Assembly (NCBI GenBank): GCA_964187785.1
Contig: OZ076417.1
Coordinates: forward strand, 25,110,001 to 25,174,000
Direction: 5' to 3'
Source: Amphiscolops sp. MND2022
Taxonomy: Eukaryota
Length of the DNA: 64,000 bases
The notes beneath the pieces are model-generated. The model ran no database searches. It was not told the origin of the DNA and saw only the letters and a list, made by a program, of their open reading frames with translations. Both the position numbers and the translations under genes were made by a program. This document shows positions 2,883-34,900 of the stretch, piece after piece; position 1 is the first letter of the stretch; every line of letters begins with the position of its first letter.

Positions 2883-3436
2883 GAGAACATAGACAAAATT
2901 GAGGAGGTGAAAGCATTCGGCTAGTCAATGAATGAAATTGAATCGATGCAATAAATGATCTCAATTGAACAATACCTTTCAGCTGAAAAAGATGATGAAC
3001 CTTAGAAATTTGTAATATAAGACTGAATTATTTGGAGATTTTTGGAGTATCAAAACAGTCGGGCAAAATTAGTTTCGAAAAGTAAAAATTTTCATGTATA
3101 AAATTGGCATTTGCAGTTTCAAGAACACAGAAGTTCTTGAACTGCTTGTTGGCCTTATCCCTGTCTTGGGAACGAAAAACCCTTAGGAATGTATATGGTT
3201 ATAAGGAACTTCAGTTCGTGACACAAGCCTGGCCTTTTATTTGAGATAACCTTTCTTTCCTTTTTTGACTGATGTAATTTGTATACGGAGGTCTGTCAGT
3301 GGTTTTTGTCAAATTTTTAGGAGAAAATTGAAGAACCACGCTAACTAAGACCGTTATATTTTATATTATTTTTCGTGATATTTTTCTATTTTTTCGTTTA
3401 TCTAGAGATAACAAAAAATAATGAAAGCAAACATAC

Positions 3437-6400: not shown

Positions 6401-7760
6401 TGGATCGAGTTCGACCGAACTGCCATAATAATTGAAATGTGATTTGATTTTAGATTCAATTTTAGGAGTTGAACTGATTATCAAAACCCGGCGCGCTCCT
6501 ATAATGCAACAGTTGTCCGTGATTCTTTTGATAATTTCTGCTTGAGGCTTTCATGTTCAATAAACATAGCAGCATATTTGTTAAGCATATCTGGAATAAC
6601 TATAAACTCCTGTTTAATTATTATATAGCGTACAATTAATCACTGTACTAGTTTACACCGCCTTTAATTCTTCTCGGACGAAAGAAAATATAACTACCAA
6701 GTGTATAGGAAATTTCGTATTCGCCTTTAAATGCAGACGAAGTTCTCGGAGAACGAATAATTAAACACTCATTCACTTCATCTCAATGAATTCGGCGTAC
6801 GAATGAAAAATTAACACTCACTCGCTTCATCGCGCGAATATTGAATACACTAACTGTCATCGGTAGCTTGAGAAACTTAAATCTCACGCTTATGCTCACA
6901 GCCGAACAAAATATTGAATCTTTTTGAGTAGGTACTCAGTTGATAAACATATATGTCTGATACTCGGCTGAAAAACTCCTCCGTACAGTTTCATTATTCC
7001 TGCTATCGCAGAAATAACAAATTTCCATCGCCTGCAACAGGGTGAATTTGTGACTTCATCAAGGTGTAGTACCAAAATTTCGTCGGAACAAAATTGTAGA
7101 ATATGTGCATTCAGAAAAATGTACATCCTTTGCCCTATACCAGGGTTATTTGTGGGGTATTCTTGAAAAAAAATCAATCATGTGGGAAAAAAATCAAAAG
7201 AAGTTAGTTAAGCGCACTTGGTCAGCCCCAATTGATCCAACCTTAGCACCTTTGCCAGCGTTGGTAGTTTTTGGTTTAGAAAATGTCGTCCGAAAAACGT
7301 TCATAACAAAAAAAAAACATACCCGAACAAATACTTCAAAAATGGAAAAGTAGAAAAACAGTGACACCAATGAAACATCAAAAAGTTGAAATTTTCACGG
7401 TCTTAAAAAGACCTGAAGGGTTCACTGGGTTTCATCGCAATCTGTATAACGCAGTAGTAGTTTCCGTAAACTCATTATATAATACAAAACACTAGAAATA
7501 GCAAGTGATAAATAAATGTAACAAATGACGACTACTCACTCGAAAATGAGAAAGAGTATACAGGGCAGCAGTATGAGGAAGTTGGTAACGACAAAAACCC
7601 ACAAACTTTTGGCCATGACTACTTTCCCCTTGCAGCAAATAGTGTTCACGCCCGGGAACCCATCCACGACCCTGCTCCTGCCTATCTCCTGGTCACTGCT
7701 CAACGTTTCATTCCTCGTAATGGGGCGCTTCAAATCCTGCTCGTCCTTTTCCATTCCCAT
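3437..7760 (-). CDS. zDHHC palmitoyltransferase paralog B (ERF2/ZDHHC9/14/18-like), exons 7540..7760 and 3437..3597; remaining exons not found in the window
   Basis: Exon 1 FPGVNTICCKGKVVMA...ILFLIF, exon 2 DAPYLW...AALVDPGIIPRST. GT-AG junctions in phase. The 161-bp exon 2 has the same length and phase as in paralog A. The DHHC exon is presumably left of the window. Confidence 0.8.
3955..4540 (+). mobile_element. Non-autonomous Helentron/HINE-like repeat, copy 1
   Basis: 5' AAGTCGGCG and 3' CGCCGACTA are inverted. 3' hairpin TAGTCG...CGACTA. Internal GGGGGACCCTTT repeats are shared with 35555-35880; related fragments lie near 9440-9560 and 13150-13345. Confidence 0.5.
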
Positions 7761-13900: not shown

Positions 13901-16900
13901 CAAAACGTGTTTCGAAGCGCTAAGGATTTGTTTTTGAAACGCAAACAAAATAAGTCACACAGTGCCCGAAAGAAAACCATATATTGCTTTTTAATACAAA
14001 TAAATATCTTAGAAAATGAAAGGCAGGGCCCTTTGCATCATTTTGGCATTTTGAATACGAATCATTTTTGAACACGAAGTATTCACGTTACAATACCTTA
14101 ATGGCAAGGAAAAGTGAATGCTTAGTGTCCAGACATCGAGACAACTACAATTCACTTTTATTTCATTCAGGCTAAATCCCCGCAAGTAGTTAAGATTTCC
14201 GCCGGCCTTTCAACGGGGGGGTCCTCGGTTTTCACGGGGTGGGTCCTTGCTCTGAAATTTTAGGACCTATCCCTAAAAGGAAGGGGTCCTTCCAAATTGG
14301 TGTTCGGAAATACTTCGGCTTTTGACTACGAAAGTAAATTATTGGTCGGATTCTTTTTGTATTCGTTTTTTGGATTCTTTTTGTATTCGTTTTTGGAATC
14401 GGATTTTTGCGAAAGTACATGTAAAAGCGTAGACACTCTTGTTTATTCTATGAATGTCTGAAAGTTTGGAAAGTACTAATCTTGAAATTTTGTTGTAATT
14501 GAATTGTAAAGCTGGATTGACTAATACTGGTACAACTTTCTTGTAAATAAAGGGAGTGGTATTTCCAACTTTCTTATCTGTATGAACACTTAATATTATT
14601 AGGAATAGTAATATGCGTTCCTCCAAATGTAGTGGTAGCGGTGTTCTTATTTCTACCTGTAAAATATCTTAACTTCCCAACAAATTCGTTTTGAATCTAC
14701 ATGTTGTTGCTAACCCCTGACCTACCCAAGTTAAATTTAATATAACTGTAAACCACCATTCTTCGTTTCAACTCTTGTTTGAAAACAAAATGAATTTCAC
14801 AAATTCAAGCTTTATTATGCTGTTAACGTTATACAAAGAAAAATTAGTGAATGATATTACTGTAATTCATTATCAATATAAAATTTGAATTTTTTCTGAG
14901 GAGGGGGACCACGGGTGGGAACTTCCACTGCTTCACAGTCTAAAAATACATTTGGTTGGGTATTGGGTAAGTCTTCTTCGAAATCAGACAACTCTGTTAG
15001 GTCAATAACGTCTGGTAATTCACTTTCTTCTATTGCATCTTGATTAAGTCCAGGGTCGGGTGGGGAAAATAAAGCTGGTTGGTTGGAGTTTGACTGTATC
15101 GGTGACTGAATAAAGTCCTCCTCCTCGTCCCCCCAATCGCAATCCGCCCCAATTTCTCTGAATATTACGTCGTCTCGCAAAGAATAATGTCCAAAAGGTA
15201 AGGTATCAACGCCGTTTGGCATTATATATCTTTTATCGTCAAAACAGCTTAGAGAAATTTTTGTCGTCTGCAAGGTAAACAGATTATGTCTTTCACTATT
15301 TATTGTGTAGTTTAATGTTCTAAGTAGTGTTTCTTTTTCGAGAATTCGATAAAATACAGAGTGTTGTAGGTTCTTTTGTGCATGTTTGGTGGTTCCTTTT
15401 GCAGAAATTTTTTGTTGATCACCCATCGCGATTGAATACAATTTTGATTTTAGTGCAACAATGCTGTGTATGATTTTACCACCAACTTCGTCTTTGAATT
15501 TCAAAGTTTCCAACTTTTGATGTTTGGAATATAGTTGATTATCTTCTTTATAGTTTGAAAAGTCAAACTCTGGGTGCACTTGTTCGTTTTCTTTGAGGTC
15601 AGCGTATATGTCTTCCGATTCGATTTCATAAATTAGGGAATCTGTATCGGAGTAGAGCACTAATGTTCGGAAGTTTGGTTTCATGTACATGTAATGAAAC
15701 CAGTACATATGTCGTTTAGATAAATCCAAGATGGTAGCGCCGACTATCGTTGGCTTGTCCCAGTAAATTTTGCCCTGTGCAAACGTTATGGCAGCCAACT
15801 GGTTGTTGAAAATCTTGAACGTTTTCATCCACATTTTGCTTGTTTGCTTTTGCAACTCATCTTGCGTGCGGACAATCTCAATGGACAATCGTTTTCTTTT
15901 ACTTTCCATGGTTTTACAAAAAGCAGAGTTGCTCATTAGTTTGAAAAAGTTTTCTTCAAACTTGTTTGTAGACGCTTTTCGTTTCATTGTGTTTAACTGT
16001 ATATATGGCTGAAGCCATTTTGACTGTTCAAATTGCAACACTCTATGTACTTTGGTAACTTGTAACCCCAGTTCACAGTATAATTTCAATGTCATGTAAT
16101 GTATAGTATAATTGGTTTTGTCGTAGAGTGTTTGGATCAACTTTTTGTTTTTTGTTGAAAAGGTCTTTGTTCCACTCATTTCCAGCAATCGTGTTTGATA
16201 TTCACCGAGCCAAAAAAAATTAATTGTTTCCTTCGTAGGAGCCAAAGGGAAATCAGTGTGTAAATCGTGCAAATGATCAGGATAATGCAAGTCAACTTCC
16301 AATACATATCCAACTGGTGAGTCATTTGGAGTATTTAGTATTTCTTGTGGGTCAACTTCGCCTTCTCTTTTCAATACAAAGTTTTTTAAAGGCAAGGGGA
16401 ACTTTTCCATGATTCCTCCATACAAGTTGTTTGCATCAATAAACAACCCAAATGTTTGCTTCTGTGAAGAGTTGTATGTTGGTAGATATTTGTTATTTGC
16501 TTCAAATTTGCGTTTTGCAAACACGGAAGAAATTCCTCCGCGGATTAGGTTTTCAGCAACTTCAAGGTGTTCTCGATTAGTTAGTAATTCGATATCTGCG
16601 TTGCACACTTTAAGGAAGGCTTCACCGGACAAATTTGACGCGGTATAAAAATGAGCACAATCCAGTCCGTAAGTTGCATAACACACTTTTCTAAACTCTT
16701 CGAATACCGAGGCCAAAATCAAAACATCGGTGTGTAAATATAAATCGTGATAGTGACCTAGTGTTTTGCAATCAAACTCTTGGTATACAAGACTAGCATG
16801 TTGTAAATCCTGATCACTAATTGTGACTTCACCCCCTGCGAGAGTGTTTTTCCAAAACTCTTTTGGGGGAAGCTTTTCCTCGGCAAATTTATCGAAACTG

Positions 16901-19900
16901 TCCATGTATGAATAGGGATAAACACCTTTCCTTTTCAGCAAGTCAATTTGCGACGGTGTTTTGTATGTATTGAATTGACTCTCCAGATAAATGAATTTAT
17001 CCTGTGGTAAGAAACCCGCCAGTTTATCTAGTGACTGGGGCATGAACTTGAAAGAGTCCAAGAATCGCATGTCTTCATATACATTTTTTGTCATTCCATT
17101 CTTGTCAGTATATGAGTTTACCCACACAGAAAATGTGAAGGAAATGTACTTTTCGTCAGTTGTAGGTATAACTGAAAACTTGTTCTTTGGATTACAATTG
17201 TTGATTGCCGAACAAATGTGGTGTATATTGTGTAACTATTTATATGTTTTCAGATAAGTTTTGTATCTTTGTATTTGGTGGGGTTTTGCGTAATTCAAGT
17301 ATCCGTACAAACACGGTTTTTACATGGTAGCAGGATGACCAAAGACTCCAAAACCCCACCAGAATGGACCTCTGACATGAGTTACGAAATTTGGAAATCT
17401 GAAGTTGAAATTTGGGATGCTGCGACCACTATCAGTGACTCAAGAAAAGCACCAACGGTGGCATTGTCGCTTACTGGGGCTAAGCGTGAAATTGCACGGA
17501 ATATACCATTAGAAGAATTGAAGGCCAACGATGGATTGCAGAAATTACTTGATAAGCTAAAAACAAGTTTTGGGCAAGATGAGGATGATAAACTGTTCTT
17601 TGATTATTTACAGTTTGAAAGATTCTCACGTGGAACAAAGTCAATTTCTGATTTCATAACTGAATTCGAAGCCCTTCATAACAGGTTGAAGAAGCACAAA
17701 GTTGAACTTCCGGATGTTTTGCTTGCTTGTAAATTGTTATCAGCAGGTCAATTTGATGATAAGGATACGAAGTTAATTCTCTCTGCAACTTCAAAGCTAT
17801 CCTTTGAAAATGTCAAGGCATCAATGCGGCGTATATTTGCATCAACAGTGAACGCGAAAACACAGAAATCGAACGATTCCACAATTGCTGTCAAAGAGGA
17901 ACCCGCCCAAGAAAATGTCCTATTTGGTAATACCCAGAGTAGATTTCGTTACGGAAATCAAGAAAGAGGTCGCGGGCAAACGAATCGAGGATTCCAAAGA
18001 GGAAGAGGACGCGGAACAAATCCAGTTTTGAAGGATGGACGAGTAACAACTTGCAATTTTTGTGGTTCTCGCTTCCATTTTCAAAAGGACTGCCCGGATA
18101 AGCAATCAGTGGCGTTAGTAGCTGACAACGATTCGGAAGCAGACGAACAATCATACCCCGTAATGATAATGATTACGTCAGCCTTATCGAAGGAAGCTAA
18201 TAAAATGGCTGTTTTGGACAGTGGATGTAGCAAAACAGTCTCTGGGCAAGAATGGATTGACGACTACGTCAAGCACTTGAAGCCTGAAATGCTAAAATTA
18301 GTAAAGAAAACAAAATTTTCCTCATCTGTGACTTTTGGAGGTGGTGAAAAGTGCAACGTTTACGTGCAGTACCATTTACCAATTGTGCTTGGTTCGCATA
18401 TTCGAATTCTAGAGGTAATGAGTATTCCAGGCAAGTTGCCACTATTATTGAGCACTCAGTCTATGAAAAAAGCTGGATTTGTACTCAATTTTATTGAAAA
18501 CACCATTTTAATGGCGGATGGAACAATAATTCATTGCATTGAATCGTCTACCGGGCACATAATGATTGACCTAAAGCAGGAGCAGAACACTTGTCTTCAC
18601 ATGGAAGTCAATAGTAAAGAAATTGACAAGCTGCATAAACAATTTGGTCATTGTAGCGCAGAAAAATTGTCGCAACTTTTGACATCGTCGAAAAGCCAAT
18701 TCAATGAGCGAGACATCAAGGTTACAGTCGAGAGCTGTAAAGTGTGCAGGCAACACGGAAGATCAAGGCCGAAACCTGTAGTATCTCTCCCATTGGCCAC
18801 AAAGACCAACCAAACCATTGCCATTGATCTGCATCAAATAGTTGAATTGGGACCATCCGTTTGGTATATTCATATTATTGACGTTTTTTCCAGATACAGC
18901 ACAGCAACTCTTATTTACAATAAGCATGCAGAGACTATAATTGAGGCAGTACTCCTTAAATGGTGCCTTATCTTCGGTTTTCCTAAATCGTTTCTGACCG
19001 ATAATGGTGGAGAATTTGACAACCATCAGTTCCATGAATTTGCCGAAAAACATGACATAATTGTTAAAACTACTGCAGCGTACTCACCTTGGTCAAACGG
19101 CGTAGTTGAAAGACACAACGCGATAATCACCGAAATGATGAAGAAAATTTTGGCAGATCCAAGTATTAAAGCCAAAAATGAAACCGCTCTTCAAATGGCA
19201 ATCTTTGCGAAAAATTGTTTGATAAACAACGATGGCTTCGCTCCAATACAAATAGTGCTGGGCGAATTACCAAGACTGCCGTCAGTACTTTCGAATCAAC
19301 CTCCCGCATTGGAACCCTCTTCAGTCAGTGAAGCAGTCGCAAACCACCTAAATTGTCTCATTGGAGCACGTAAAGCCTTTCTTGAATGTGAAAACAGTAC
19401 GCGTATTAAGCGTGCCTTGAAAGCTAACATCCGTTCCGACGATGGCCCATTTGAAAATGGGCAGAAAGTCTACTATAAGAGGGACCACGAGCAAGATTGG
19501 CATGGCCCTGGTGTTGTAATTGGTCAAGACGGCTCAGTGGTTTTTGTACGACACGGCGGACGCTTTCAAAAAGTCCACAAAACTAGGATTCGACGAGTAA
19601 ATTGTGAAAATCTGGAGTCACAAAATACCATATCTCCAAAAGAAACAGATATGAAACATGCAACTGAAATGAAGGAACCAGAATCTGACTTATCTACATC
19701 AGACGAGGAGTCCACAAACGTCCCCAGAGACAAGGAATTGCAAAACGACACAACACAGAAAGTTCAAATTGATAAAGCGATTAATCCGGGTCCAGGCAAG
19801 TTGATTAGCTTCAAATCCTCTCAACCAGGTTTTGAAGGGAAGACCATTGAAGCCAAGATCGAAAATAGAGGAGGGAAAGCCACAGGAAAGCACAAAAACT

Positions 19901-22900
19901 GGTGGAACGTCACATATAGTGCACCCCAAGAATTGGCTGGAAACAAAGATTGTATTGACGTCTCAGAATTACAGGAAGCCAGCATAACTAACGTCCTAAT
20001 TGAGAGTTCTGACGAGTTCGCCACTGCCAAACAAGATGAAATGAACAATTGGCTGAAAAATGGAGTTTTTATTGAAGTAAATAACGAGGGACAACGCTTT
20101 ATGACGTGCAGATGGGTGCTGACAGTGAAGCCAAATCGCAAGAAAGCCAGACTCGTGGTTAGAGGTTTTGAGGACCCGGACATGGATTCACTCATTAAAG
20201 ACTCACCGACATGTTCTAGAGATACATTTCGCATTGTTGTGACCATCTGCGCAGCAAAAAATTGGCAATGCCACTCAATGGATATACGAACAGCCTTTTT
20301 ACAAGGTGCTCAACTCAAACGAGACGTCTTTCTATTGCCTCCAATCGAAGCCGGCGTTCAAAACAAGCTATGGAAGTTACAAAAATGTGTTTACGGGCTA
20401 AAAGACGCCGCACGGCATTGGTATGATCGCTTGAAACAAGAAATTATGAAAGCTGGATGCGCCGTTTCAAGGCTAGACCCTTGTCTGTTCTACAAAAAAA
20501 ACGCCCAGTGTGGGCTGATGGGAATTATTGCAACACATGTGGATGATTTCTGGTGGGCAGGAACCTCGGAGTTCGAGGGCAGTGTCATTGAGACGTTAAA
20601 CAGTGTTTTCGAAGTCCGCACACAGGTATCGACCCCTTTCAATCACCTAGGGTTCAATGTATTACAAGGCAAGGACACAATTACTTTGGATTTATCGGAT
20701 TATGTCGAAGAATTGGCCGAATTACCCGTCCCATGTGAAGATTTTGTCAAACTGGATGAAAAAGCAAAGATGAGGTCACTTTTGGGGAAACTGCAGTGGA
20801 TTGGCGGCCAAGCAAGACCGGATTGTTCATATATTTTGAGTCGATTACTCTCCCTCGAAAATTCATGGACGAAAGAACATTTTCTTACTATCAACAAATT
20901 AGTTAGAAGGCTTCGGTATTCAAAAAGGGACTGCCGTCTTGTGTACAACAAGACTCTTGACACAAACAATTGGACGATTATAGTTTTTAGTGATGCATCT
21001 CTGAATAACCTCCCCAACGGAGGTACACAGGCCGGTCACATCATATTTTTGGGGCAACCATTGACATTCCCTTGTTTATTAAATTGGAAGTCGCAAAAAC
21101 TACGTAGAATTGTCCGGAGCACGATTTGTGGGGAGACAATCGCTTGTGTTGACGCTGTAGATGCAGCATACCTTTGCCAATGTCTTCTTAAGGAATTACT
21201 GGATGTAGAAATCCCAATCAAATGTTACACAGACAATAAATCGCTGGTGGAGAACCTCTACTCAACCAAAATTCAACAGGACCGCAGATTAAGAGTAGAA
21301 ATTGCTTATTTACGTGACATGATCGACGGAAAAATCATCGACGAAATAAAATGGGTTCCAACTGTTCAACAATTAGCTGACTGTATGACGAAATTGACTA
21401 ACGCAGCAGCTGACCGATTACAGCAATTTATTAATTCTCCAGCTCCAAAGTGATTTTTTATCTTTTGAATGTGATATTCGATATTTATTGTTAGTCAAAA
21501 CCTACTGTTGCGCAAATGAATTCCAATGTATTTTCATAAGTTGTTTCCGGATATAATATATTGATTTTAATTTGCAAGTTATAACCAGGGAAACACACGT
21601 AAAATAATCCTTATGTTATTTATAATGTATTCATTTTAATTTCTGTAACGCCGTTGTGCAGCTTGATGCGATTAATTGATCAAACGAACGAACACATTTA
21701 AATTAGTGCTGTTAATTCATTTCCTCTTCACTTGGTATAAAGAAACTACCAGCTCACGTTAACCATAACTCATCATCCTTAAACTCGAACAACCATGCCA
21801 TGAATTATTGCAATTTAAAGTTGGAGTGTATGTGTAACTATTTATATGTTTTCAGATAAGTTTTGTATCTTTGTATTTGGTGGGGTTTTGCGTAATTCAA
21901 GTATCCGTACAAACACGGTTTTTACATATATCATATCCAGCCATGTTGTGTGCTATCACGGGGGTGAAGTTTATTGACTTCCTTTGTAGATTACATTCTG
22001 AATGTGCCCACCCTAGGAATGTACCACTGTAATGACAATGGTCCAACACTTTCTGCTCGTCATTCGTGAAAGGTTTTTTACAAATCCAACAATCATTTAC
22101 ATTGTCTTTGTGCGTCGAAGGCTTGCCCTTGTAAATTCGGTGACTTTGTTTTCTATGATAAATGTCTGTTGCCAATTTTTCCAATTCTTTTATTAAATCG
22201 TCCAAGCAATCGGGACCTCGCATGATTCTGTAAGACAAAACTTTATCATTTCCATGTTCTACAATTACAAAAGCATAACCACAAGGCACATGTTTTTCCA
22301 ACTTTACTTGACTGCTAATACTGGGTGAAGGAGCGCATGTAGATAAAGGCACTAGGAGCGCTTCAGTATCAAGGTGAATAACCAGTGGAACAAACCAAAC
22401 TGCTCTTGTATTTTTGAATTGATGTATGTTTTTATGCTCATCGGGTAAAATGATCGCCGCGGCCTCGTTTTCGTAACAGTTGAGCTTGTGTATTTCGAAA
22501 CTCCCGGTTGAACTACAAATATGAAAACAGTTTCTGCAAATTTCATCCCTCGATCTACTTTGTTTATTTTTCAAAAAGTTTACAAAATGTTTCAAATCAG
22601 TAATCAGTACGTAGTGATGAGAACCTCCTTCTGACAACAATAAAAGATCCATGATAAAGTCACTAGGGAATTTAGAGACTCTGAGAGGTAACAAATCTTT
22701 CTTCTCCAATATAAACACATTGACTTGGACTTTGTTGAGTTTTTCGAATCGTTCAAGTTCATGAAACGGCATTGGCATCCGAAAGTTGCCTGCATGCTTT
22801 TTTGCCAGAGGATTATATGTAGGATTATAAGTGCCTGGGTTTGTTTTGCAGCGCCACGAACTTGTTTCAACCAATGGTATGTCTGTGTGCAAGTGGTAAG

Positions 22901-25900
22901 CGGCCGTATAACAATATATAAAGCAATTCTCACCTTCAATGTTCCGAATATTGAGTAGTGAACTACAACCTTGAAGTTCATTTGGAAGTGCGATGTAAGA
23001 GCTACCCCGAATGGGAGAATAGGATGTAAATTTAACAAAAAGGTTTTTAATTTCGGACAAAATCCACCCACTTCCTTGGGATGCAAAAGTAAATAAAGCT
23101 GAAGTAAGTTGTTCTATCAATTGATAATAGTCGTTGTCTGTGATCCCATAAAAGTAAACTGGTTGCAACTTTGTGTTGGTATAAATTGTGATTGTCTCTT
23201 GAGAGTCATCATCAACTTTCGGTTTAACTAACTTCAATTCAGTTGTTAATTGAAATTTCTTGGGTCCATTGCGACATTTTTCTCTAATAAGGTTTTGTAT
23301 TTGATTTTTTTCCTTACAAAGTAGTTCGAATAAATCAATTGATGTGATCCTTCGCTTGAGTTGATACGTTTCCAATGATCCCCAAAAGGCTTTTTCCACC
23401 TGTTGATAACCGGTCATTCTTTCGATGTTGTCATTTTCGCGGGGTGTAAATATTGTTGGTAAACCATGATCATGCTCAAGATGATACGAGTATTTCATAG
23501 CTTCACCGTAAACTATGTTGCAATAAAGGCAATGATTTACTATTATATGTCCATGTTTTTGTAAAAAATGTTGTTTCATCGTATTATGAAATGAAGTATC
23601 ATCATCACCAATTATGGTATCCCGAGAGACTGGATTTCTTTAAATTTTGATTCGACCACCTTTTACGGTATTCCAGGCGCCATGTTTTTTCCAGGAAAAT
23701 TGTATGCATGTTCGACTAACTTTTTTGTTTCCGTATATTGACTGCTGGGCATTATAGGGGGGGAGGAACGGGAATTTTTTTATTTTTTCAAAAAGGTCAA
23801 ATTTTCCATGCACCCCCCTTTTTCGAATTTCATTTTTTCAAAATCGTCTTGCGCACCTACCTGCAAATTTTCAGACCGATCCGACCAACAGTTTTTGAGA
23901 AAATTGACATTTTTTGTCAAAAAATGGCATTTTAAAAAAATGCATTTTTGGTCAAAATCTCAACACTCGGTAAAGCTAGCGCCCTGCGGTTTTCACCAGC
24001 GTTTTCAGCGTCCTCTTTTCTAGTTGTGTGCCAAATTTTGGCTCCGAAACTTTTTTCAATGTTGAGAAATGTTTGTTTTTTTGACCGAAAATGATCAAAA
24101 ATTGAGTTTAAAAAATGTTCAAAATCTCGTAAACTACGCGACTTTTGAAATTTACTCCTGTGGAAAAGTCTTGTAAATTTTTCACAAACTCAACTCTCAA
24201 ATTTGGTTTCTAAACAACTTTGACTGCTTGAACAATCAAATTTCGCCTATAATAGAGGAGTGCAAAGTGAATTTTTCCATTTTTTCAAAAAAATCAAAAT
24301 TTCCATGCACCCCCCTTTTTCGAATTTCATTTTTTCGAAATCGTCTTGCGCACCTACCTGCAAATTTTCAGACCGATCCGACCAACAGTTTTTGAGAAAA
24401 TTGACATTTTTTGTCAAAAAATGGCATTTTAAAAAATGCATTTTTTGGTCAAAATCTCAACACTCGGTAAAGCTAGCGCCCTGCGGTTTTCACCAGCGTT
24501 TTCAGCGTCCTCTTTTCTAGTTGTGTGCCAAATTTTGGCTCCGAAACTTTTTTCAATGTTGAGAAATGTTTGTTTTTTTGACCGAAAATGATCAAAAATT
24601 GAGTTTAAAAAATGTTCAAAATCTCGTAAACTACGCGACTTTTGAAATTTACTCCTATGGAAAAGTCTTGTAAATTTTTCGCAAACTCAACTCTCAAAAA
24701 CGATTTCCTAGGCTACTTTAAACAGAACTCTGCATAAAATGTCTTTAAATTTCGACGTGGTTAGTAAGCTTTTGACAGTATTTGGTTAGATTGGTTAGTA
24801 AGCTTTTGACAGTATTTGTTAGATTGGTTAGAATCGCTTCAAAAGTTTCTTTTCCTGCTGTTTTGCCTTCTTCACTGGTGGTGGCTCCAACGCTGCAGTT
24901 CGAGTACTATCAGGCGTCACAATTTGAGGACTCACTGTTAGATCATCACCATCTTTCGTCTCTTCGTCTTCTGTTGTACAGACCAGAACTTCTGGGGAGA
25001 CTTGTGGTGATGGAGATTCAGGATCATGTTCAACTCCCCAAAAATCTTCAAGTGAATCAACTTCCCTGAAGAAACCCATTTGATTCTCCGTTAATGGAAC
25101 CATTGCGCAGTCGTCTCTACATAGGATGCGTTTGATTTGTATAGGTAGCATTCGTAGGTCACAACGATGAAGACTTTCTATATCCCAGTTAGACGCTGCT
25201 TCACAGTCCACAGAGTCAATCTTTCTCTTTCTTTCCAGAATCGTCTTTTCAGTCGGTTGTTTGCTCAACTTGTGATAGACCATGTTTGGTAACAGAATAT
25301 GTTGCTTTGTTTCCCACCGGTCATTTTCGTCAGACCTCATCTGTTCAATTATTGAGAGCGCTTTTTGAAATTGTGTTTCATAAATGATGAAGCGTTTGCT
25401 TGTAAAATGTGTAAAGACAGTAGCCATAGTTGAATCGTCGACTTGGACAAGACCAACTGTTTGAGCGGTAGCGAATTTATCGAATAACGGCTTGAGTTTT
25501 GAACGCTAGTGAATCTACAGTTTTTTGTTTCTCACGGTGGTCCGATTTCCACATGGTAACAATGTGTTTTGAATTATTACATTGAGTCTATTTTGATTTT
25601 TCAGATGTTTTGAATTTTAACACCAGTGTCGTGGCCTGGGCGTTTGCTGTCTACTTGAAAGATCAACGTGGGTGGCAATGATCTTGATTTATCAGTCGGC
25701 GGTGCAAGCGTTTGTTGTTTACATGAAAGATTAAAGCAGGGTGACCAAACCTTGAACCATAAAAGCCCGCCCACCTCAGACATTGACCTTGCAATATTTA
25801 CCAGGTTCTTCATACTTTTGATTTTGTTTCCAACATTCAGAATGTTCTCTGGTGATTTTACTCTTGCTAAGGACGAGGATTTTGGAGACTATTACTGTGA

Positions 25901-28900
25901 CTTATCAGAAAAATCCAACAGAATATTGCGAGCAACGGTGAAAACATACGAGCATACAGGAACCTACGTGTTTCTAAAACTCTTCAAAAAGAAGCCAGAC
26001 GCCGAATTTGCTCTGGTTCAAAAAATCACGTTGACAAAAGAAGAGTTTGAAATTCTACTGTGGAAAGGAAAATCAGTTCTACAACCGTCGAATATAAAAA
26101 AAGTTACAAAAAAGTGCAAAAAAATTAAGAAACCCTCATTTGTTGATTCTGTGGCGGAGGAGGATGACGGGGACAACGTAGACGGAGAAAACAAGGAGAA
26201 TATTGATCCTAGAAAGTATGGTGGAAGCAATGTTTGAGCGTTCTCCCGATTACTTTAAGCAATTTAGAAAAAACTTTCGCTTCTTTTTATTCAAGGAAAA
26301 ACCCAAAGCTGGCGTGGACTTCCCATTAGATGTTGTTATTTCCATTGGCTTACACTCACCTGTGCATGATGGGCTTTGTAACGCTTTGCCAGACAATCAC
26401 TATCATGTTTTGGCCCAGTGTTTTGGTGAAAATTATAAAGGGCAACCCAAAAGTTATTTATTACCATGTTTATATTCAACCTACGCCTTACTAATTGCAA
26501 ACAGTGATGAAAAGGAAAGATGTGGTGAAATTTTTGAAAAATTGGATCAAGCCGTTCAATACAATTGTGACCCTCCTAATCGAAACCCAAAGAAACTTTT
26601 GCCATCAATCTGTTTTTCTGTTCAAAAATGTGACAAGGCTGTGCAAGTCAGCTCTGGGTTGAGTCAAGGAACAATACAACGCTTGGAAAATGTTATGCTT
26701 GGACCGTATGGTGGTCATTTCCTACTCATTGCTGATATTTTTCAAACTGGTCACGGATCGCTTAATTTTGTGCCTGTACTAACCTTTTCTCTGAATGAAA
26801 TTGTTTGAGAATAAAAATGTTTGAAATTAAACATTAAATTACATGAGAGTTTTTACAAAGCGAAGCAAATCAGTTTCAGAAATGTAAGAAATCAATGGAT
26901 AATACGAACTTAACAAAAAATGAGCAATATAAATACAATACAAACCACACAAGTTTGAATTTTGATTTTGTAACGGCGTCTTTGTGGCATCTTTTAATGT
27001 CTGCTGAACTTGGATTGGTATCGCGGAGATTCTTTTAGCAATATTAGGATAATGTAAAAATAGGTCTAGTCCAAGGGGATCTGCAAAGTTGAAAGTACCT
27101 TTCACGTTGCTCCAAACAATCCAATGTTTCCCAGCGCTGTTTGAGTTTTCTGAATTGACAATTACAAAAGTGTTGTTGGGTAATAGGATAGGAAACTTGT
27201 CTGCGGGATAAATTCCTCCAAACTTGTATTTCAATCTTGGGCTGTTTTTTATTAGGTGGGCAATGTAATCTTCATCCATTTTTCAAGTGGTAGGGTTTAA
27301 CATGACGTTTTTGGAGACTTTTCTATGAGAGTCAATGTAAATTGTTGATGCTTTTTCGCCCAACAGAAACACCTCAGTGTTCACTGCCAGCGCTGCTGAA
27401 AACTTCAACTCGAGCGAAATGGCAGCGTTAGTGAGCTCAGGATAAAGAAAATCATGAGATGCTTGTTGGGTGCTAGTCAGGTCAAACACCATTACAAAAT
27501 GATTAGCATAGTCGGCGAAAGGAATTCCATGTCCATGATGACCAAAGGCGACAGCATCCATTGTTGACATGTAAACTCGTTTCAGATCATCTGTTGCCAA
27601 AGGAGTTCCTGCAACAGGGTATCCATTCCGGTAAACAGTAACTTCGTTTAGGTTATGTTTTTGGTAATGAAATGGATTTGTGTCTTTTGAACCAAGAAAA
27701 GACGCATTACTGACGAGCGCCAAAGCGAATCGTCGAATTGGTTCTCGACTGAAAACGTCTTCCTTACTCCAACTGCGACTACCTGTCGGAATGAGAAAAG
27801 TTTTGGGTAGAACCTCTGTGTACCGATACAGAGCTGGAGTTTTTGTCAGAGTTTTCTCTATGGCTATGAAAACCTGCTCAGAAACTGTCATTTTCCGGAC
27901 GTAAAGATTGGCTTGGGTAATGGTAATTTTGTAAATTTTTGCAACGTCATCATGAATCAAAACAAACTCTGGTTTCGAACGGACAAAAGAAATTCGCAAA
28001 GTCACTCCACTCAGTAAATGTTTATCACAAGAAAATACATCAGCTGCAACTTTTCCAAAAAATGTTAATTCTCCAGACTGTCTCGACTCCAATTCTCTGT
28101 TTGTAAATGGAGTTGTTGTACTGTTCCCAGGATGCTGCTCATATGTATATCCTTGGCAACGTAACCATGTATCTTTGGCTTCCTTGCCATTCGAATATTC
28201 GGTTTCAATAAAGGCCTTGTGTGCGTAAACACCGTTTGCATTGGAAATTTTTATTCCATTAGCAGTAACAGTGCATTCGGAGAATAGAGAGTGTAATGTA
28301 TTATTCACAAAAATAGGAGTGTCTGTTTGTGTTGGATCCGTTGCATCATGTCGTAAGTCATTTCCATCGCTTGTTTAATTTTGCATTTTATCTCGAGAAA
28401 AATTTTTTGTAGGTCCAAAAAATTATTTCGGTCTCCTACAACTTCAAATTCCAATGTTGGTCCATTGGGGGAGTAAATCGGGCCAATCTTTTGTTCAAAG
28501 GAAGAGTCAAATGTAATCAAAACTGGTGATCGCTCAAAAATGTCGAGGGAACTATGTGAAGCTTCGAGTGGTAAAATATTAGGCAACATTTTTGACTTTT
28601 GAAAAGAAATCGGACCGACTTCTCTGTTTGCGTTTTGATTTCGTAATGGTTTTTCGTTTCTTTGAAGAACGTTTGCTTTTTCCACCAATCTGCTTCTTTA
28701 TCGTCTTTTTCATGGCTGTTTTAGCAGCCTCACGTGGCGATTTTCGCTTTGCAATAACATCAAAGACCTCAGGGACACTTTGAACGAGCAATTCTTTGCC
28801 AATTTTTTTGCAGCAGGTAAAATAAAATTTTTTGCAAAGGGTAAAGCCACTCGGCCAATACCGGCTGCCAGTGCACCAATTCCACTACCTCGTTGTCTGT

Positions 28901-31900
28901 TGTAACTGGCGAAATGGGGTAAATACACTTGCTTTGAGTAATAGTCTTCCATTAGGCGAATTTTTTAAATTTTAGGGTCAAAACAACTTGACCTTTACCA
29001 CAAAAGGGTACCAGGATCCCAGTCTCTGTTCTGAGTTGAATGCTTATTGTTTGAATATTTTGAACCAACAGTTTCTTGCATTGTAAATCAAAAAATGATC
29101 TTGTTTCCAAATTCTGGGTTGTCACGACCTTGCCACTTTCAACACGTTTCCCACTATCAATGATTCTCAAAACGGGTGCTTTTACGTCGCCCGTGTTTTG
29201 ATATTCAATCAAATCAGTGTAAACAAGAATTAGACTAATGCCAGAAATCAAATCCACCGGAAAGTCATTCACAACCCATCTACTGTTCAGGATGTCTTCG
29301 TTTCCTATATGAATACCAAAAGCAGTCTCTTTTCCCTTGAATCCAAGTAGGTTGGGAATGTTTCTGTTAGGAAAAGTGTAGCCAGCATATGCATCAAATT
29401 TAATTTCTAGGCCATTTTCGGTGGATCTATGTTTACCGTCTTCCGTGAGTAAATTTACTTTTGAACGCATTTCAAAAAGTAGGTTGTTGATATGACTGTA
29501 CATCGAAGGTCTTATCTTTAGTTTTTGATAATATGGAACAACTGGTTCAGAGTCAATTTCAATTTCCTCTGCTTTTTCTTCATCAATTTCGTCAAGGTTT
29601 TCTTCATCTTCCTTCTTTTTGGTAGTGTGAACGTAATAAAAAAGTCTGTGTAAACGTTATTAATTTCCGAGGGAAAAATAATTTCTGATAGAGCCACACG
29701 CCAGTCGCCTTCCAGGGAAATATTTTGTGGGAGTTGATTTTTGAATGCTGCCAATGTATTGTCACCAAAAATTTCTAATGACGCTGTGGATAATAAATGA
29801 ACTTCAAATTCGTCCATTTTTCTTTTTCACCAAAATCAATTCAGGCTGATAAAACTTGCCCAAGAGTTTTTCCTTCTCAGAGTCCAGTGAGTTGTAAGTT
29901 GGGGGATTGAGAGTTGCGATTTTTTCAATTTGAAAAATTTCGTCGGTAAAATTCTGTTTGTAACCTTTTTTGAAGGGTAAGTTTTCTTTTGACACTCTCA
30001 CAAAGTCACCGACTCTGAATTTCGGCACTCGTAGCTGTTTAGTGGACTTGTAAGAAACCAGAGAAATCAAATGAGGTACATCTTTATCTGAAACCTTCTT
30101 TGGAGCCAATCCTGTCACTCGGTTTACTCGTGAATTTATGATGTCAACAAAGTCATGGAGTTTTTTGATGTATTGATAAGACCATCTCTTTTCCAAATGT
30201 TTATATATAATGTTTTTTAGAGAACGAATATTACGTTCTGCAAAAGCAGATTTTGTCTCACCATGAGTGCTGTAAATGTCAATGTTTTTGGAATCGCAGA
30301 ACTGCTTAAATTCCCCTTTAAACTCTGATCCCTTGTCTGACCAGATTTTTTCGGGAATGGACTTTGTTATCATTCTTTTGAATGCTCTTGTTGAATCTGC
30401 TGCACTTTTTGTTTTCATTGGTTCAACCCGTAGGAATCTCGATAGTACATCAACTGCAACTAGCAAGTATTTCACACCGTTGTTGTATTTTGCTAATTTG
30501 TCCATATAAGCAACATCTATCGACCAAATCTCATTGATTCTGTAAGCTTGAACCTTCAATCGTGGAAAATTTTTTCTGGGAGCGTGATATTTTGTATGAG
30601 CGTCTGTTTGAGCCAAAAATGTTTCCACTTTCCTTTTTGGAAGCTTACTAGCTTTTTTCAAGTTTTCAACGCTACCATAAGCAGCTGGACCTTGTGTGTA
30701 AAGTTTCTCGAGGGTTTTTCTTTCAGATTCCGAGAGATGTCCATATTTTCGATCCAGACGCTTTGCTTTTAGCAATTTCTTCAGATTCTTCGTTGCAGGC
30801 ATCTGATTCGTCTCGAGTGGGTTCTGCTCTCTTTCTTGTTGTACTAGGGTTCAAAATGTTTTTGGCGTTCCGGTTAGGCACTAAATTAGGATTTACCATC
30901 AATTCTTTAAGAATGATAGAGTATGAAGGATCAGTTAGGTTTTTGTTGGGTTGCTGCAGATTATAAAGAAATGTTGAGAGCGAAATTTTTGTGGAAATTT
31001 TGTTTACTGTAATATCGCCTGTTTCATCAAAATCAATTGTTTCGGAAGATTCAATTTTGTTCAAAATTTCTCTCGTTCTTTGTTTTTGTGCCGCTGTGAG
31101 CATATCCAAAGACTTTAAAATATTTTCTTTACTGGTTTTTTCTTTCTTTTCTACTGTTGAGGGGTCCGGAAAAGTATTGTTTCTTTGCAGTAGAGTGAGA
31201 GACTTTGCCTTTTGTTCAACTTCTGGGTCTCTCAAAACTTGCAGTGTGGAGTGTTTCTGTTGAATATAAAAACTTTTTGAGATAAGTACAAATTCTTGGG
31301 TGTTCATAACGGAATTCAATCTGTCAGGTAACAGAAACAAGGCCGAATAATAAAGTTTAACAATTTGAGACCTTTTGGTGACATTAAAATTTTTCTGCGT
31401 TCCTTATTGGAGGTAGACCTTTTACAAAGTAATCTGAGTTGGATTTCGTACTGTTTTAATTCGTCCACGTTGATACCAACCGTTCCATTCACAACACTGA
31501 TTGCACACTCGCAACAAAATTTGAAAAATTCCTTGTCACAATGTCGTAGAAGTTTTTGTTGCTGTACTGAAGTGAGTTTTTCCAAGAGACTGAGTGTATG
31601 CAAATTTTTCTCGCTCATTGTTAATTTCTGTAATTTTTGCTTGTGACGAAGGCAAATAAAATATTGTTGGTCCTGGTCCTACAATGTTTGAACAAAAGCG
31701 TAGACATTCACTTGTCTTTGGATCCAAATCAATGAGTAAATGACCATGTGGTTCTGCAACAGCGTCTGTGTAGCACTCTTTTAGAAATACAGCTTTGTTT
31801 AATTGTCTTCCAAGATATTCAATTTGCTGTGTGTCACGAGGAGAATTAAAAAGAATAATGTGGGTTGTGTTGAGGTCAATTGTACGTGACCACTTACTTT

Positions 31901-34900
31901 GATGATACAAATTATGTTTGACAAAAATACAGTTAATTCCTCTGTGTCGGCCAGAGACTGCAATTTTTGCAAAGTTTTTATCTTGGTAAATTTCTTCGCA
32001 AGAGTCGTCAAATATCAGCAAACACTCCTGAAGCGTCTTTATCAAATCAAAATCCAGACAACTGATAAACTCGATGTTCATCCGTTTTTCCACTTCTTTG
32101 AAAATTTGTTGGAACTCGCGATAAAAGTAGTAAATTTTTTGAAAGCGTGGATAAAAGGTCTTGGATGTGAGCATAGAAAAAATCAGTCGGGTTTTTCCAG
32201 ATCCAGATGGTCCAACAACTGACATGAAAACTCTTTCTGTAGTAAAAATGATTTTGTTCATAATTTTGGGCTAGGTAAAAGATATCCAACTGATCCAGCC
32301 AAAAGTGATGTCCAAAGTGGCATGTCTTCACATGATACTTCAAAAAAGATTAGTTTCACCAGACAAATTGTTATCACAAAGAAAGCTGAGAATACATGAA
32401 AAAAAATATAACTTGCGATCGTGGTATGTTTGTAGCAAAACAAAATTTCCAGGCTGGTCTCTCATTATTATCTTTATCGAACACAATTTCTTGACATGAT
32501 AATACATCTGGTAAATCAACTGTTTCTGAACCCATTTTTCAAAAAGTGTACTACGAAATTATTAAATTCAATTCCAGTTAATTGTACATTATTACACACA
32601 CGTTGTATATCAGAAATGGTTCAAAATTGTTAAATAAAATGTTAGTACAAAAGATACAAAAAAAATGTACTGCGGAACATCATGCATTGTTTCCTTAGTA
32701 CGTGCCGGACCTTGTGTGTCGTTTACACAAGTTTTTTGTTGGCTGTCAATGTTGAGGTAGGTTAAGGTGCAGAGACAAGATTTTTCTTGCCATTGAGGCA
32801 CCGAAGGACTACACTGCAGAGAGAGTTAGTTCCAAAACAAAAAAAGCATTATATCAAATCACACAAAAAGTCAGTTCAAACTTTTGCTCCTTGGTAAGAC
32901 GAATATTCTTTGGGTTTCCAGCATTATAAATGAATTCCATTCTTTATCTTTTGTTTCCAAATCGATTTTGAATTTTGAGCCAGTTTTCCCAGATCCGTAA
33001 TAGAACCAAATTCTGAGGACACTTTTGGATTTGACTACGTCCCTCACTTCTTGTGGTAGATTCGGGCAATTTTTGTCAATTTCGACAGGAGGAGGTGGCC
33101 TGGAAATGTGCATGTTTAAAGGAGGTAGTTTCTTTTTCATCCTGGAAAGTTTTGAGTCTCGTGCACTAGAAGCTACTGACATATTCTTTCCAAAAGTCCT
33201 GCTTGCTTCCACCACACCACTATTGTTTGGAACAGCCTACACACAAACGCTCAAGTTTGGAGTCAACTTTTGATTGGTTTGCATTGCGCCTACTCTCTAA
33301 CCACTGATAAGCAACAGCAGTTTTCAATTTGCTGCAATGCCAGAAATGTTGTTGTTGACTATTCCATGGGAGAAAGTTTGCGTGGTTCCCACAAGAAACC
33401 ACAGCATTAACACATTAATGGTTAATTGGGGGACAACCAAGCCTTTGCAAAATGTAAACTTTTTTAAAATAGTTGGAGATAAATGCTCTCTTCACATGTC
33501 CGTCGACAAAAACAATTGCGTTGGGAAAACGAAGTCGTAAACTGGCCAAATAGTTATGGATAGAAGTGTAAGGGTAAACGCCACTGTCCCAGTCAATACC
33601 GTGTATTCTTTTTGTTAAGAATATTATCGAGTCGCGGTTAATAGTTGAAATTGTGGAAATGGCTTGAGGAGGTTTAAAAAGTAGGGTTTCTTGATAATTT
33701 TTACTGTGAACGCTCAGCTCTTTAACGATAAGACCGTTGTAGTCAAACCCTTCAAAGTCAATAACAAGAATTTCGTTCTCATTCAACATTCCAATTCACG
33801 GAACCAGTGGGCTTGTGCTGAATATTTGAGTTTCAAAATGCTCCAGAGAGGGCGAACTGAGCATGACCAAAACTTTTGCAATCTGGTTCTTCTATCCAAG
33901 CAGTCACACACGTCACTAAACGTCCCCATAAGCTCTTGCGAGTCGCGAACAATCACAAATAATCTGTACACTTTGCAATACTTGTAGAAAATTTCACATT
34001 TGATTTCTGGTTCTTCTTTCAGCAAATATTTCAAATGGCCCAAAGTAATGTTGTTGAAGTTGCAATTTTTTAGATATACCAAACAAAAACTTAGCACATA
34101 CTTTTGATAAGTTTCGAATTTGTCTGAATTGTCTAATGAAAGTCTATGAAAAGTTTGCTGCACTTTTACAACGTCTATTTTTTGGGGGTCCATTTCCAAT
34201 TTTGATTCTCGATTCTCAGCATTCCTTCCTGCTGCTGATATTTGCTTTATAATGAATTTTTATCAAAACACGTTCGTAACATCAGACGAATAATGCATTC
34301 GAACAAAACTGTACATAAATTTCACACCCTCTCGTACCCTATTAAACTTTGGTGTGAATTATACGACAAACTAGATTACTTTTTATTGGCCGATCGATCG
34401 CTTGGCACAACAATACTACAACCCGACTTAGTTGTTGTACCAGTATTAGTCAATCCAGCTTTACAATTCAATTACAACAAAATTTCAAGGTTAGTACTTT
34501 CCAAACTTTCAGGCATTCAAAGAATAAACAAGAGTGTCTACGCTTTTACATGTACTTTCGCAAAAATCCGATTCCAAAAACGAATACAAAAAGAATCCAA
34601 AAAACGAATACAAAAAGAATCCGACCAATAATTTACTAGTCAAAAGCCGAAGTATTTCCGAACACCAATTTGGAAGGACCCCTTCCTTTTAGGGATAGGT
34701 CCTAAAATTTCAGAGCAAGGACCCACCCCGTGAAAACCGAGGACCCCCCCCCCCGTTGAAAGGCCGGCGGAAATCTTAACTACTCCCGCAGACTCTAGGT
34801 ATTTATTACTTACTACACATGGAAGAGTGAATAAATGCTTACCATGCTTGGACTTCATGTACTTGAACTCGTCTTGAGTGGCCCTGGGCAGGATTCCGGG

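What the first reader, a model, noticed from the sequence alone, without database searches (positions are those of the whole stretch)
14185..34784. Complete capsid-encoding Polinton virus occupying a 21-kb host intron, co-oriented with the host gene
Both TIRs, the 6-bp TSD and the full replication, integration and morphogenesis gene set are present. The element makes up ~98% of zDHHC-A intron 2 (13750-34842). All but two of its genes are on the same strand as the host transcript, so host transcription reads through the viral genes in sense. That could drive viral gene expression, or cause premature polyadenylation or mis-splicing of the host mRNA. Near-identical TIRs suggest a young insertion.
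Basis: partly seen in the sequence, partly recalled or inferred. Interest (0 to 1): 0.75.

Follow-up and report, generated by a model that had tools for sequence, protein, structure and literature searches.

The report
Degraded Polinton inside a zDHHC intron
A real Polinton/Maverick virus-like transposon sits in an intron of a palmitoyltransferase gene, in the gene's orientation, but six of its genes are broken, one by a nested retrotransposon, so it is an ordinary dead copy of a multi-copy family.

Summary
The element at 14185-34784 has ~351-nt inverted ends that differ by 3 substitutions and 2 small indels. It has AGTAGT...ACTACT tips and a perfect 6-bp duplication, CCCGCA. It fills 97.7% of intron 2 (13750-34842) of a minus-strand zDHHC gene. 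The exons on its two sides map to adjacent parts of ZDHHC5/9 and join in frame. All hallmark genes are present: polymerase B, rve integrase, A32-type ATPase, adenain-like protease and a double-jelly-roll capsid protein. A penton candidate is identified by position only.

The word "complete" does not hold. I compared the window copy with a fully open sibling copy that is 99.3% identical. Six genes are broken:
- the major capsid gene, the penton candidate and two small ORFs, by one frameshift each;
- one small ORF, by one nonsense change.

A second public assembly holds the same locus with the same Polinton and flanks but without the copia. So the junctions are not a misassembly, and the copia insertion is very recent and polymorphic. 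The family is multi-copy (identical protease on at least 24 contigs), and some copies have every ORF open. This is an ordinary new member of a known kind, and any effect on the host mRNA remains untested.

The parts
14185..34784 (-). Polinton/Maverick element, including a nested retrotransposon. It is about 15.9 kb without the nested element.
   Evidence: Inverted ends and TSD. 99.26% identical over 15,858 nt to sibling copy L001. The same locus without the nested element is 15,895 nt in L012.
14185..14536 (.). Left terminal inverted repeat, starting AGTAGT
   Evidence: The end motif matches the (AGT)2/(ACT)2 motif reported for Mavericks (PMC8097293).
34434..34784 (.). Right terminal inverted repeat, ending ACTACT
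   Evidence: It differs from the left arm by 3 substitutions and 2 small indels.
14179..14184 (.). Target-site duplication CCCGCA, left copy
34785..34790 (.). Target-site duplication CCCGCA, right copy
   Evidence: Six of seven sibling copies with both ends found also have perfect 6-bp duplications.
14857..23600 (-). Protein-primed family B DNA polymerase gene. BROKEN: one nested-element insertion and one deletion relative to the 1388-aa sibling gene.
   Evidence: tblastn outer bounds. Break counts. Relatives carry PF03175, often with PF02945 and C2H2 fingers.
17335..21453 (+). Uninterrupted gag-pol gene (1372 aa from its ATG) of the nested Ty1/copia LTR retrotransposon. The whole element is about 4.7 kb, with identical short LTRs and a 5-bp duplication, and lies inside the polymerase gene.
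   Evidence: Pfam gag, rve and RVT_2 in copia order. LTR pair 100% identical. Absent from the same locus in L012.
23604..24588 (.). Non-coding stretch with a repeated block of about 0.5 kb. Its length varies among copies.
   Evidence: The same peptide appears twice about 497 nt apart in the ORF list. Most indels against L001 fall here. Sibling element lengths range from 16,160 to 17,089 nt.
24828..25427 (-). ORF199, function unknown, open
25842..26237 (+). ORF131, function unknown, open. One of the two genes antisense to the host gene.
26230..26808 (+). ORF192, function unknown, open. The second gene antisense to the host gene.
26839..27279 (-). Adenain-like cysteine protease, open and identical to the sibling copies
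   Evidence: Pfam Peptidase_C5, E 4.7e-5, above the curated cut-off. The identical protein is on at least 24 contigs.
27283..28589 (-). Major capsid protein gene (double jelly-roll). BROKEN: one frameshift.
   Evidence: The sibling protein P0001 (435 aa) is 99% identical. Its model has pLDDT 80 and matches PBCV-1, Sputnik and mavirus capsids at E about 1e-16, and adintovirus, MELD-virus and virophage capsids. Break count.
28582..28952 (-). ORF124, in the position of the Maverick 'PW' gene. BROKEN: one frameshift.
   Evidence: Gene order from PMC8097293.
28952..29817 (-). ORF288, minor capsid (penton) candidate by position only. BROKEN: one frameshift.
   Evidence: The fold attempt had low confidence, and a profile search of the PDB found nothing.
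29804..30802 (-). rve-type integrase, open
   Evidence: Pfam rve, E 4.7e-11..
30723..31307 (-). ORF194, function unknown, open
31536..32261 (-). A32/FtsK-type packaging ATPase, open
   Evidence: Pfam Pox_A32, E 2.1e-6, above the curated cut-off..
32261..32535 (-). ORF92, function unknown. BROKEN: one frameshift.
32871..33182 (-). ORF103, function unknown, open
33223..33789 (-). ORF189, function unknown. BROKEN: one nonsense change.
33783..34193 (-). ORF136, function unknown, open
36045..36205 (-). Host zDHHC-A, predicted exon 1
34843..35003 (-). Host zDHHC-A exon 2, ending 52 nt before the element's TSD
   Evidence: Matches ZDHHC5 residues 37-82 and ZDHHC9 residues 62-105. GTAAGC donor.
13609..13749 (-). 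Host zDHHC-A exon 3
   Evidence: Pfam DHHC profile positions 4-29. Matches ZDHHC5 residues 94-129. The acceptor fits the phase.
12708..12845 (-). Host zDHHC-A exon 4, carrying the DHHC motif
   Evidence: Pfam DHHC profile positions 30-78
11853..12120 (-). Host zDHHC-A exon 5
   Evidence: Matches ZDHHC9 residues 216-293, E 2e-12. Joined exons 1-5 give 289 aa with no stop.

Best explanation
This is an endogenous, already inactivated copy of a recently active, multi-copy Polinton/Maverick family. The inferred history is as follows. A roughly 15.9-kb linear element was inserted by its rve integrase into a 487-nt intron of a zDHHC palmitoyltransferase gene, which created the 6-bp duplication. It landed in the sense orientation 52 nt downstream of the exon-2 donor. 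Either after insertion or in the copy that was inserted, it acquired four 1-nt frameshifts, one nonsense change and one deletion. Very recently a Ty1/copia LTR retrotransposon inserted into its polymerase gene on the opposite strand. With its polymerase, major capsid gene and penton candidate broken, this copy cannot supply those functions. It is a passenger in a now 21-kb intron that the host gene appears to tolerate, because all five recognised exons are open and the splice sites are canonical.

Shown: the element's structure, the gene identities, the break counts, the intron position, and the presence or absence of the copia in the two assemblies. Inferred: the order of events, and that the host gene is still spliced correctly.
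For: - Ends and duplication.
- Hallmark genes: integrase, ATPase and protease by Pfam. The capsid protein by fold, with pLDDT 80, pTM 0.81 and Foldseek E about 1e-16 to PBCV-1, Sputnik and mavirus capsids. The polymerase through more than 7,900 relatives, many carrying PF03175.
- Sibling copy L001: 16,204 nt with its own 6-bp duplication and every ORF open.
- Window copy against L001: 99.26% identical, with six genes broken.
- Nested copia: gag, rve and RVT_2 in copia order, with identical LTRs. The two Polinton arms abut exactly in L001.
- Locus L012, from a second assembly (ENA ERZ25074608, contig ctg183290): 1 mismatch in 20.6 kb, the same host flanks, the same Polinton, and 4,704 nt shorter, so it lacks the copia.
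- Host gene: the exons are collinear on ZDHHC5/9 and on Pfam DHHC. Joined exons 1-5 are open, and the intron without the element would be 487 nt, against 587-1041 nt for its neighbours.
- Family size: the identical protease is on at least 24 contigs (51 index blocks) of one assembly. The 90% cluster of the capsid protein has 131 members.
Against: - Three of the four 1-nt frameshifts lie in homopolymer runs of 6-8 nt, where long-read consensus errors also occur. They appear in both assemblies, but the two assemblies may derive from the same reads.
- The penton assignment rests on gene order alone.
- No expression data are available, so whether the host gene works and whether the element is silent are both untested.
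- The host organism was not identified.
Confidence: 0.88

Rival explanations
1. The small breaks are assembly errors. On this reading the copy is intact apart from the nested copia, and the allele without the copia (as in L012) is a complete Polinton.
For: Three of the four frameshifting 1-nt deletions are in homopolymer runs of 6-8 nt. The two assemblies may share their reads.
Against: The capsid-gene frameshift is at a run of only 3 nt. The nonsense substitution and the 209-nt deletion are not homopolymer artefacts. Contig coverage is about 100-130x according to the contig names. Sibling copies in the same assembly keep these same homopolymers in frame.
Confidence: 0.07
2. The exons on either side belong to two different genes or to a pseudogene. 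On this reading the element is intergenic and not intronic.
For: No transcript evidence is available. A second zDHHC paralogue lies in the same window, so exons could have been mixed up.
Against: Exon 2 matches ZDHHC5 residues 37-82 and exon 3 matches residues 94-129, on the same strand and in the right order. The phases fit only the GT/AG pair at 34842/13750. Joined exons 1-5 give 289 aa with no stop and an intact DHHC motif. The paralogue's exons 1 and 2 lie elsewhere, at about 7.6 kb and 3.5 kb.
Confidence: 0.04
3. The sense-oriented intronic element is functionally engaged with the host gene. It could be transcribed by read-through, truncate the mRNA at viral polyadenylation signals, or contribute cryptic exons.
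For: The element is co-oriented with the host gene, and all but two of its genes are in the host sense. It carries 17 AATAAA and 11 ATTAAA hexamers in the host sense. It lies only 52 nt from the donor site. Polinton insertions have reshaped a host gene in C. elegans (PMC11414722).
Against: The hexamer count is not above the composition expectation of about 22. The host exons and splice sites are intact. No expression data are available. A further 4.7 kb has since been added to the same intron, which does not suggest strong constraint on it.
Confidence: 0.1

Closest known systems
Polinton/Maverick elements of animals (adintovirus-like), as described for vertebrates in PMC8097293 and for animals in general in PMC8502044
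   Same: - Size of about 16 kb.
- Terminal inverted repeats of a few hundred nt with the (AGT)2/(ACT)2 end motif.
- A 6-bp target duplication.
- Protein-primed PolB, rve integrase, A32-type ATPase, adenain-like protease and a double-jelly-roll capsid protein.
- The gene order integrase, minor capsid, small ORF, major capsid.
- Intronless genes.
- Most genomic copies are degraded by stops, frameshifts and large insertions.
   Different: - In this family nearly all genes are on one strand, with a two-gene antisense cassette. The vertebrate elements have two modules.
- The polymerase carries an N-terminal C2H2 finger and a weak Endonuclease VII-like stretch, both shared with many relatives.
- The nearest named relatives are from an acoel and an octocoral, at 43-60% identity.
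Sibling copies in ENA assembly ERZ25074608 (L001, L005, L009)
   Same: About 99% nucleotide identity, the same gene order, the same ends and 6-bp duplications.
   Different: In those copies every ORF is open. The window copy has six broken genes and a nested retrotransposon.
Polinton insertions at the C. elegans eri-6/7 locus (PMC11414722)
   Same: A Polinton inserted inside a host gene and polymorphic among individuals.
   Different: In C. elegans the insertions caused inversion and gene fission, which trans-splicing rescues. Here nothing indicates rearrangement, and the element sits quietly within one intron.
Ty1/copia LTR retrotransposons (for the nested element)
   Same: Domain order gag, protease region, integrase, reverse transcriptase (RVT_2). 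Short identical LTRs and a 5-bp duplication.
   Different: The LTRs are unusually short, at about 96 nt. No second copy was found in the window or in the twelve fetched loci.

Membership tests
Polinton/Maverick | Terminal inverted repeats with 5'-AG...CT-3' tips | tested here: met
   About 351-nt repeats with AGTAGT/ACTACT tips. Motif as reported in PMC8097293.
Polinton/Maverick | 6-bp target-site duplication | tested here: met
   CCCGCA on both sides. Six of seven siblings also have a perfect 6-bp duplication.
Polinton/Maverick | Protein-primed family B DNA polymerase | tested here: met
   The window pieces gave no direct Pfam hit and no PDB sequence hit. However, a 99%-identical sibling fragment and many relatives at 40-86% identity carry PF03175 DNA_pol_B_2.
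Polinton/Maverick | Retrovirus-like (rve) integrase | tested here: met
   PF00665, E 4.7e-11, score above the cut-off
Polinton/Maverick | Double-jelly-roll major capsid protein | tested here: met
   The model of sibling P0001 (99% identical to the window gene) matches solved double-jelly-roll capsids at E about 1e-16 and TM 0.6-0.67.
Polinton/Maverick | Single-jelly-roll minor capsid (penton) protein | tested here: inconclusive
   ORF288 is in the expected position and is predicted to be mostly beta. The model has pLDDT 42, and the profile finds no solved penton.
Polinton/Maverick | FtsK/A32-type packaging ATPase and adenain-like protease | tested here: met
   PF04665, E 2.1e-6, and PF00770, E 4.7e-5, both above their curated cut-offs
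Intact (potentially autonomous) Maverick, in the sense of PMC8097293 | All conserved ORFs uninterrupted, plus inverted repeats and a duplication | tested here: not met
   Six genes are broken: the polymerase twice, and the major capsid gene, ORF288, ORF124, ORF92 and ORF189 once each.
Exogenous adintovirus (free linear genome, virions) | Free-ended linear DNA or particles | not testable with these tools
   Only assembled, integrated copies with host flanks were seen.
Ty1/copia LTR retrotransposon (nested element) | LTR pair, 5-bp duplication, integrase upstream of an RVT_2 reverse transcriptase | tested here: met
   A precise empty site is present in L012.
zDHHC palmitoyltransferase (host gene) | DHHC cysteine-rich domain flanked by transmembrane segments, collinear with known zDHHC proteins | tested here: met
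   PF01529 on exons 3 and 4. Exons 2, 3 and 5 are collinear on ZDHHC5/9. The DHHC motif is present in the joined model.

The most novel reading that the evidence does not exclude
The sense-oriented Polinton is transcribed as part of the zDHHC pre-mRNA. On this reading it either perturbs that gene's processing or serves as a host-driven source of sense transcripts, for example small-RNA precursors, against the family's intact copies in the same genome. Separately, the copia inside it may be a heterozygous or even somatic insertion, because the two assemblies otherwise differ by a single base over 20.6 kb.
Probability: 0.1. Interest if true: 0.45.

Novelty: new member of a known kind. Interest (0 to 1): 0.2.

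Why it matters
The element matters mainly for annotation. It should be masked as a degraded Polinton with a nested copia, and the 21-kb intron should be annotated as one intron of a zDHHC gene. The family behind it is of modest interest. It is multi-copy and about 99% identical among copies, and some copies have every ORF open, in an unidentified genome whose closest named relatives (43-86% identity) come from marine animals and a marine metagenome bin. That makes it a reasonable subject for descriptive work on Polinton population dynamics. The presence or absence of the copia gives a dated marker within one locus. Nothing here changes what is known about Polintons.

Tried and rejected
- Pfam on the window's polymerase pieces and on the sibling's full polymerase found no DNA_pol_B_2. 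A phmmer search of the C-terminal piece against the PDB found nothing relevant. The polymerase identity therefore rests on the precomputed PF03175 hits of relatives.
- The penton candidate folded with low confidence (pLDDT 42.5), so I did not send it to a fold search. Its profile found no solved penton.
- Pfam on the small ORFs (136, 103, 194, 192, 131, 199 and the piece of 189) gave only chance-level hits.
- A scan of the JGI metagenome contigs for the Polinton-empty allele, using the two flanks joined over one copy of the duplication, found nothing. That collection probably lacks this organism, so the result says little.
- An exact-product look-up of the copia polyprotein found no record. 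There is no second copy in the window or in the fetched loci.
- Literature searches for 'F54H12.2' and for the assembly accession found nothing. The host organism stays unidentified.
- I rejected misassembly as an explanation, because two assemblies share both junctions.
- I rejected a short intron in the capsid gene as the reason it reads in two frames. The sibling gene is one continuous 435-aa ORF, and the difference is a 1-nt deletion.

Both give away where some genes are interrupted. I stopped doing so once I noticed, deleted nothing, and repeat none of those places in this report.


Full report

Yes, for the structure of the element.
- An inverted-repeat search finds three adjoining arm pairs. 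Together they form one terminal inverted repeat at 14185-14536 and 34434-34784.
- Aligned, the two arms differ by 3 substitutions and 2 small indels over about 351 nt, and similarity ends sharply after that.
- The element begins AGTAGT and ends ACTACT, and the six bases CCCGCA flank both ends.
- The tips match the (AGT)2/(ACT)2 end motif, and the 6-bp duplication is the one used to define Mavericks in PMC8097293.

**2. What genes does it carry?**

- Pfam finds an rve integrase (E 4.7e-11), a Pox_A32-type ATPase (E 2.1e-6) and an adenovirus-type protease (E 4.7e-5). All three score above the curated cut-offs.
- The candidate capsid gene has no Pfam family. A search with its larger open piece found 385 relatives. 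One is a 435-aa protein (P0001) that is 99% identical and heads a 131-member cluster. More distant relatives are named 'F54H12.2-like' by NCBI.
- A model of P0001 built on 32 relatives reached pLDDT 80 and pTM 0.81. It matches the double-jelly-roll capsid proteins of PBCV-1, Sputnik, mavirus and iridovirus at E about 1e-16 and TM 0.6-0.67. In BFVD it matches a bracovirus-borne protein and adintovirus, MELD-virus and virophage capsids.
- The polymerase pieces gave no Pfam DNA_pol_B_2 hit of their own. Many of their more than 7,900 relatives carry PF03175, as does a fragment of a sibling copy, often together with PF02945 and C2H2 fingers.
- ORF288 lies between the integrase and the capsid gene, where Mavericks keep the minor capsid gene. 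Its model was poor (pLDDT 42) and its profile found no solved penton. That assignment is by position only.

**3. Is it complete?**

No.
- The polymerase reading frame is interrupted by a plus-strand 1394-aa ORF. That ORF carries gag, rve and RVT_2 domains in the Ty1/copia order. It is bounded by a 100%-identical short LTR pair and a 5-bp duplication.
It explains why the element is 20.6 kb.
- For the other genes I used a sibling copy, L001, fetched through P0001. L001 is 16,204 nt, has its own 6-bp duplication AACGTC, and has every ORF open, including a 1388-aa polymerase.
- I compared the two arms of the window element separately with L001. They are 99.26% identical over 15,858 nt, and they abut exactly in L001.

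Break counts relative to L001:

| Gene | Breaks |
|---|---|
| Polymerase | 1 nested-element insertion and 1 deletion |
| Major capsid gene | 1 frameshift |
| ORF288 (penton candidate) | 1 frameshift |
| ORF124 | 1 frameshift |
| ORF92 | 1 frameshift |
| ORF189 | 1 nonsense change |

- Integrase, ATPase, protease and ORFs 136, 103, 194, 192, 131 and 199 are open.
- Caveat: three of the four frameshifts are 1-nt deletions in homopolymer runs of 6-8 nt, where consensus errors also occur.

**4. A second assembly of the same locus**

- Looking up the window's own ORF199 variant returned locus L012, from ENA assembly ERZ25074608, contig ctg183290.
- L012 aligns to window 10126-35429 with 1 mismatch and 4 gap openings. 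It includes both host flanks and is 4,704 nt shorter.
- Its Polinton is 15,895 nt, has the same duplication and shows the same pattern of split small genes. Its polymerase gene is not interrupted by the copia.
- Two things follow. Second, the copia insertion is present in one sequence and precisely absent in the other. It is therefore very recent and polymorphic, heterozygous or mosaic, which fits its identical LTRs.

**5. The family**

- The window's protease sequence occurs unchanged on at least 24 contigs (51 index blocks) of that assembly.
- Of eleven sibling loci inspected, three (L001, L005, L009) have all ORFs at full length. One more has all core genes open. The rest have between one and four broken genes.
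- Six of seven siblings with both ends found have perfect 6-bp duplications of unrelated sequence.
- This mix of a few intact copies and many degraded ones is what PMC8097293 reports for Mavericks. In that study 96% of copies are degraded by stops, frameshifts and large insertions.

**6. The host gene**

On the minus strand, open frames with canonical splice sites give five exons: 36205-36045, 35003-34843, 13749-13609, 12845-12708 and 12120-11853.

| Exon | Match |
|---|---|
| 2 | ZDHHC5 residues 37-82 and ZDHHC9 residues 62-105 |
| 3 | ZDHHC5 residues 94-129 and Pfam DHHC positions 4-29 |
| 4 | Pfam DHHC positions 30-78 |
| 5 | ZDHHC9 residues 216-293 |

- Joined as they stand, the exons give 289 aa with no stop and an intact DHHC motif.
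- The element takes 97.7% of that intron. Without it the intron would be 487 nt, against 587-1041 nt for introns 1, 3 and 4.
- A paralogue (zDHHC-B) has its first two exons at about 7.6 kb and 3.5 kb.

**7. Orientation and possible effects**

- All element genes except ORF131 and ORF192 are on the host gene's strand. The nested copia is antisense.
- The element carries 17 AATAAA hexamers in the host sense, which is not above the roughly 22 expected from composition.
- Whether read-through, premature polyadenylation or cryptic splicing happens cannot be judged without transcript data.
- There is a precedent for Polintons reshaping a host gene, at eri-6/7 in C. elegans (PMC11414722). Nothing here points to rearrangement.

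**8. Verdict**

This is a real but ordinary feature: a young, already inactivated member of a multi-copy Polinton family, lodged in sense in a zDHHC intron and itself the target of a very recent copia insertion. It is a new member of a known kind, and interest is low.

I stopped once I noticed, deleted nothing, and do not repeat those places here.

Noticed in passing
window 3405-3587 and 7539-7760 (minus strand): A second zDHHC gene (paralogue B) lies in tandem downstream of the first. Its exons 1 and 2 resemble those of gene A at 36-42% identity. The rest of the gene runs off the window.
   Followed up: partly
window 1009-2715 (+): An open hAT-type transposase of 449 aa, with DUF659 and the hAT C-terminal dimerisation domain. 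A 99-aa ORF that may be its N-terminal exon lies just upstream.
   Followed up: partly
window 54682-55749 and 56345-57412 (minus strand): Two identical copies of an RT-RNase H ORF pair (221 and 113 aa) lie 1,663 nt apart, next to an aspartyl-protease ORF at 57875-58528. This is a tandem internal duplication in a Gypsy/BEL-like LTR retrotransposon.
   Followed up: partly
window 47806-50759 (minus strand): A LINE-type element with an endonuclease (Exo_endo_phos_2) and an RVT_1 reverse transcriptase, split over several ORFs.
   Followed up: partly
window 63430-63813 (+): An RVT_2 (copia-type) reverse-transcriptase fragment from another copia element. It has no nucleotide similarity to the copia nested in the Polinton.
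   Followed up: partly
window 23604-24588; L001-L011: The non-coding stretch between ORF199 and the polymerase gene holds a repeated block of about 0.5 kb. It accounts for most of the length variation among family copies (16.16-17.09 kb).
   Followed up: partly
L001:11610-15776 and relatives: The family's polymerase has an N-terminal C2H2 zinc finger and a weak Endonuclease VII-like stretch (below the Pfam cut-off) upstream of the polymerase domain. Many relatives carry the same combination.
   Followed up: no
protein P0154: A polymerase fragment 86% identical to the window's is filed at NCBI under a metagenome-assembled 'Cyanobacteria bacterium J06629_18'. This is probably eukaryotic Polinton DNA binned into a bacterial MAG.
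   Followed up: no
L012 versus window 10126-35429: The two assemblies differ by only 1 substitution in 20.6 kb, yet they differ by the whole 4.7-kb copia. Either heterozygosity is very low here, or the copia is present in only part of the sampled DNA.
   Followed up: partly
window 17229-17325 and 21831-21927: The nested copia has very short LTRs (about 96 nt), and its gag-pol ORF is fully open. By sequence it looks like a recently active retrotransposon.
   Followed up: partly
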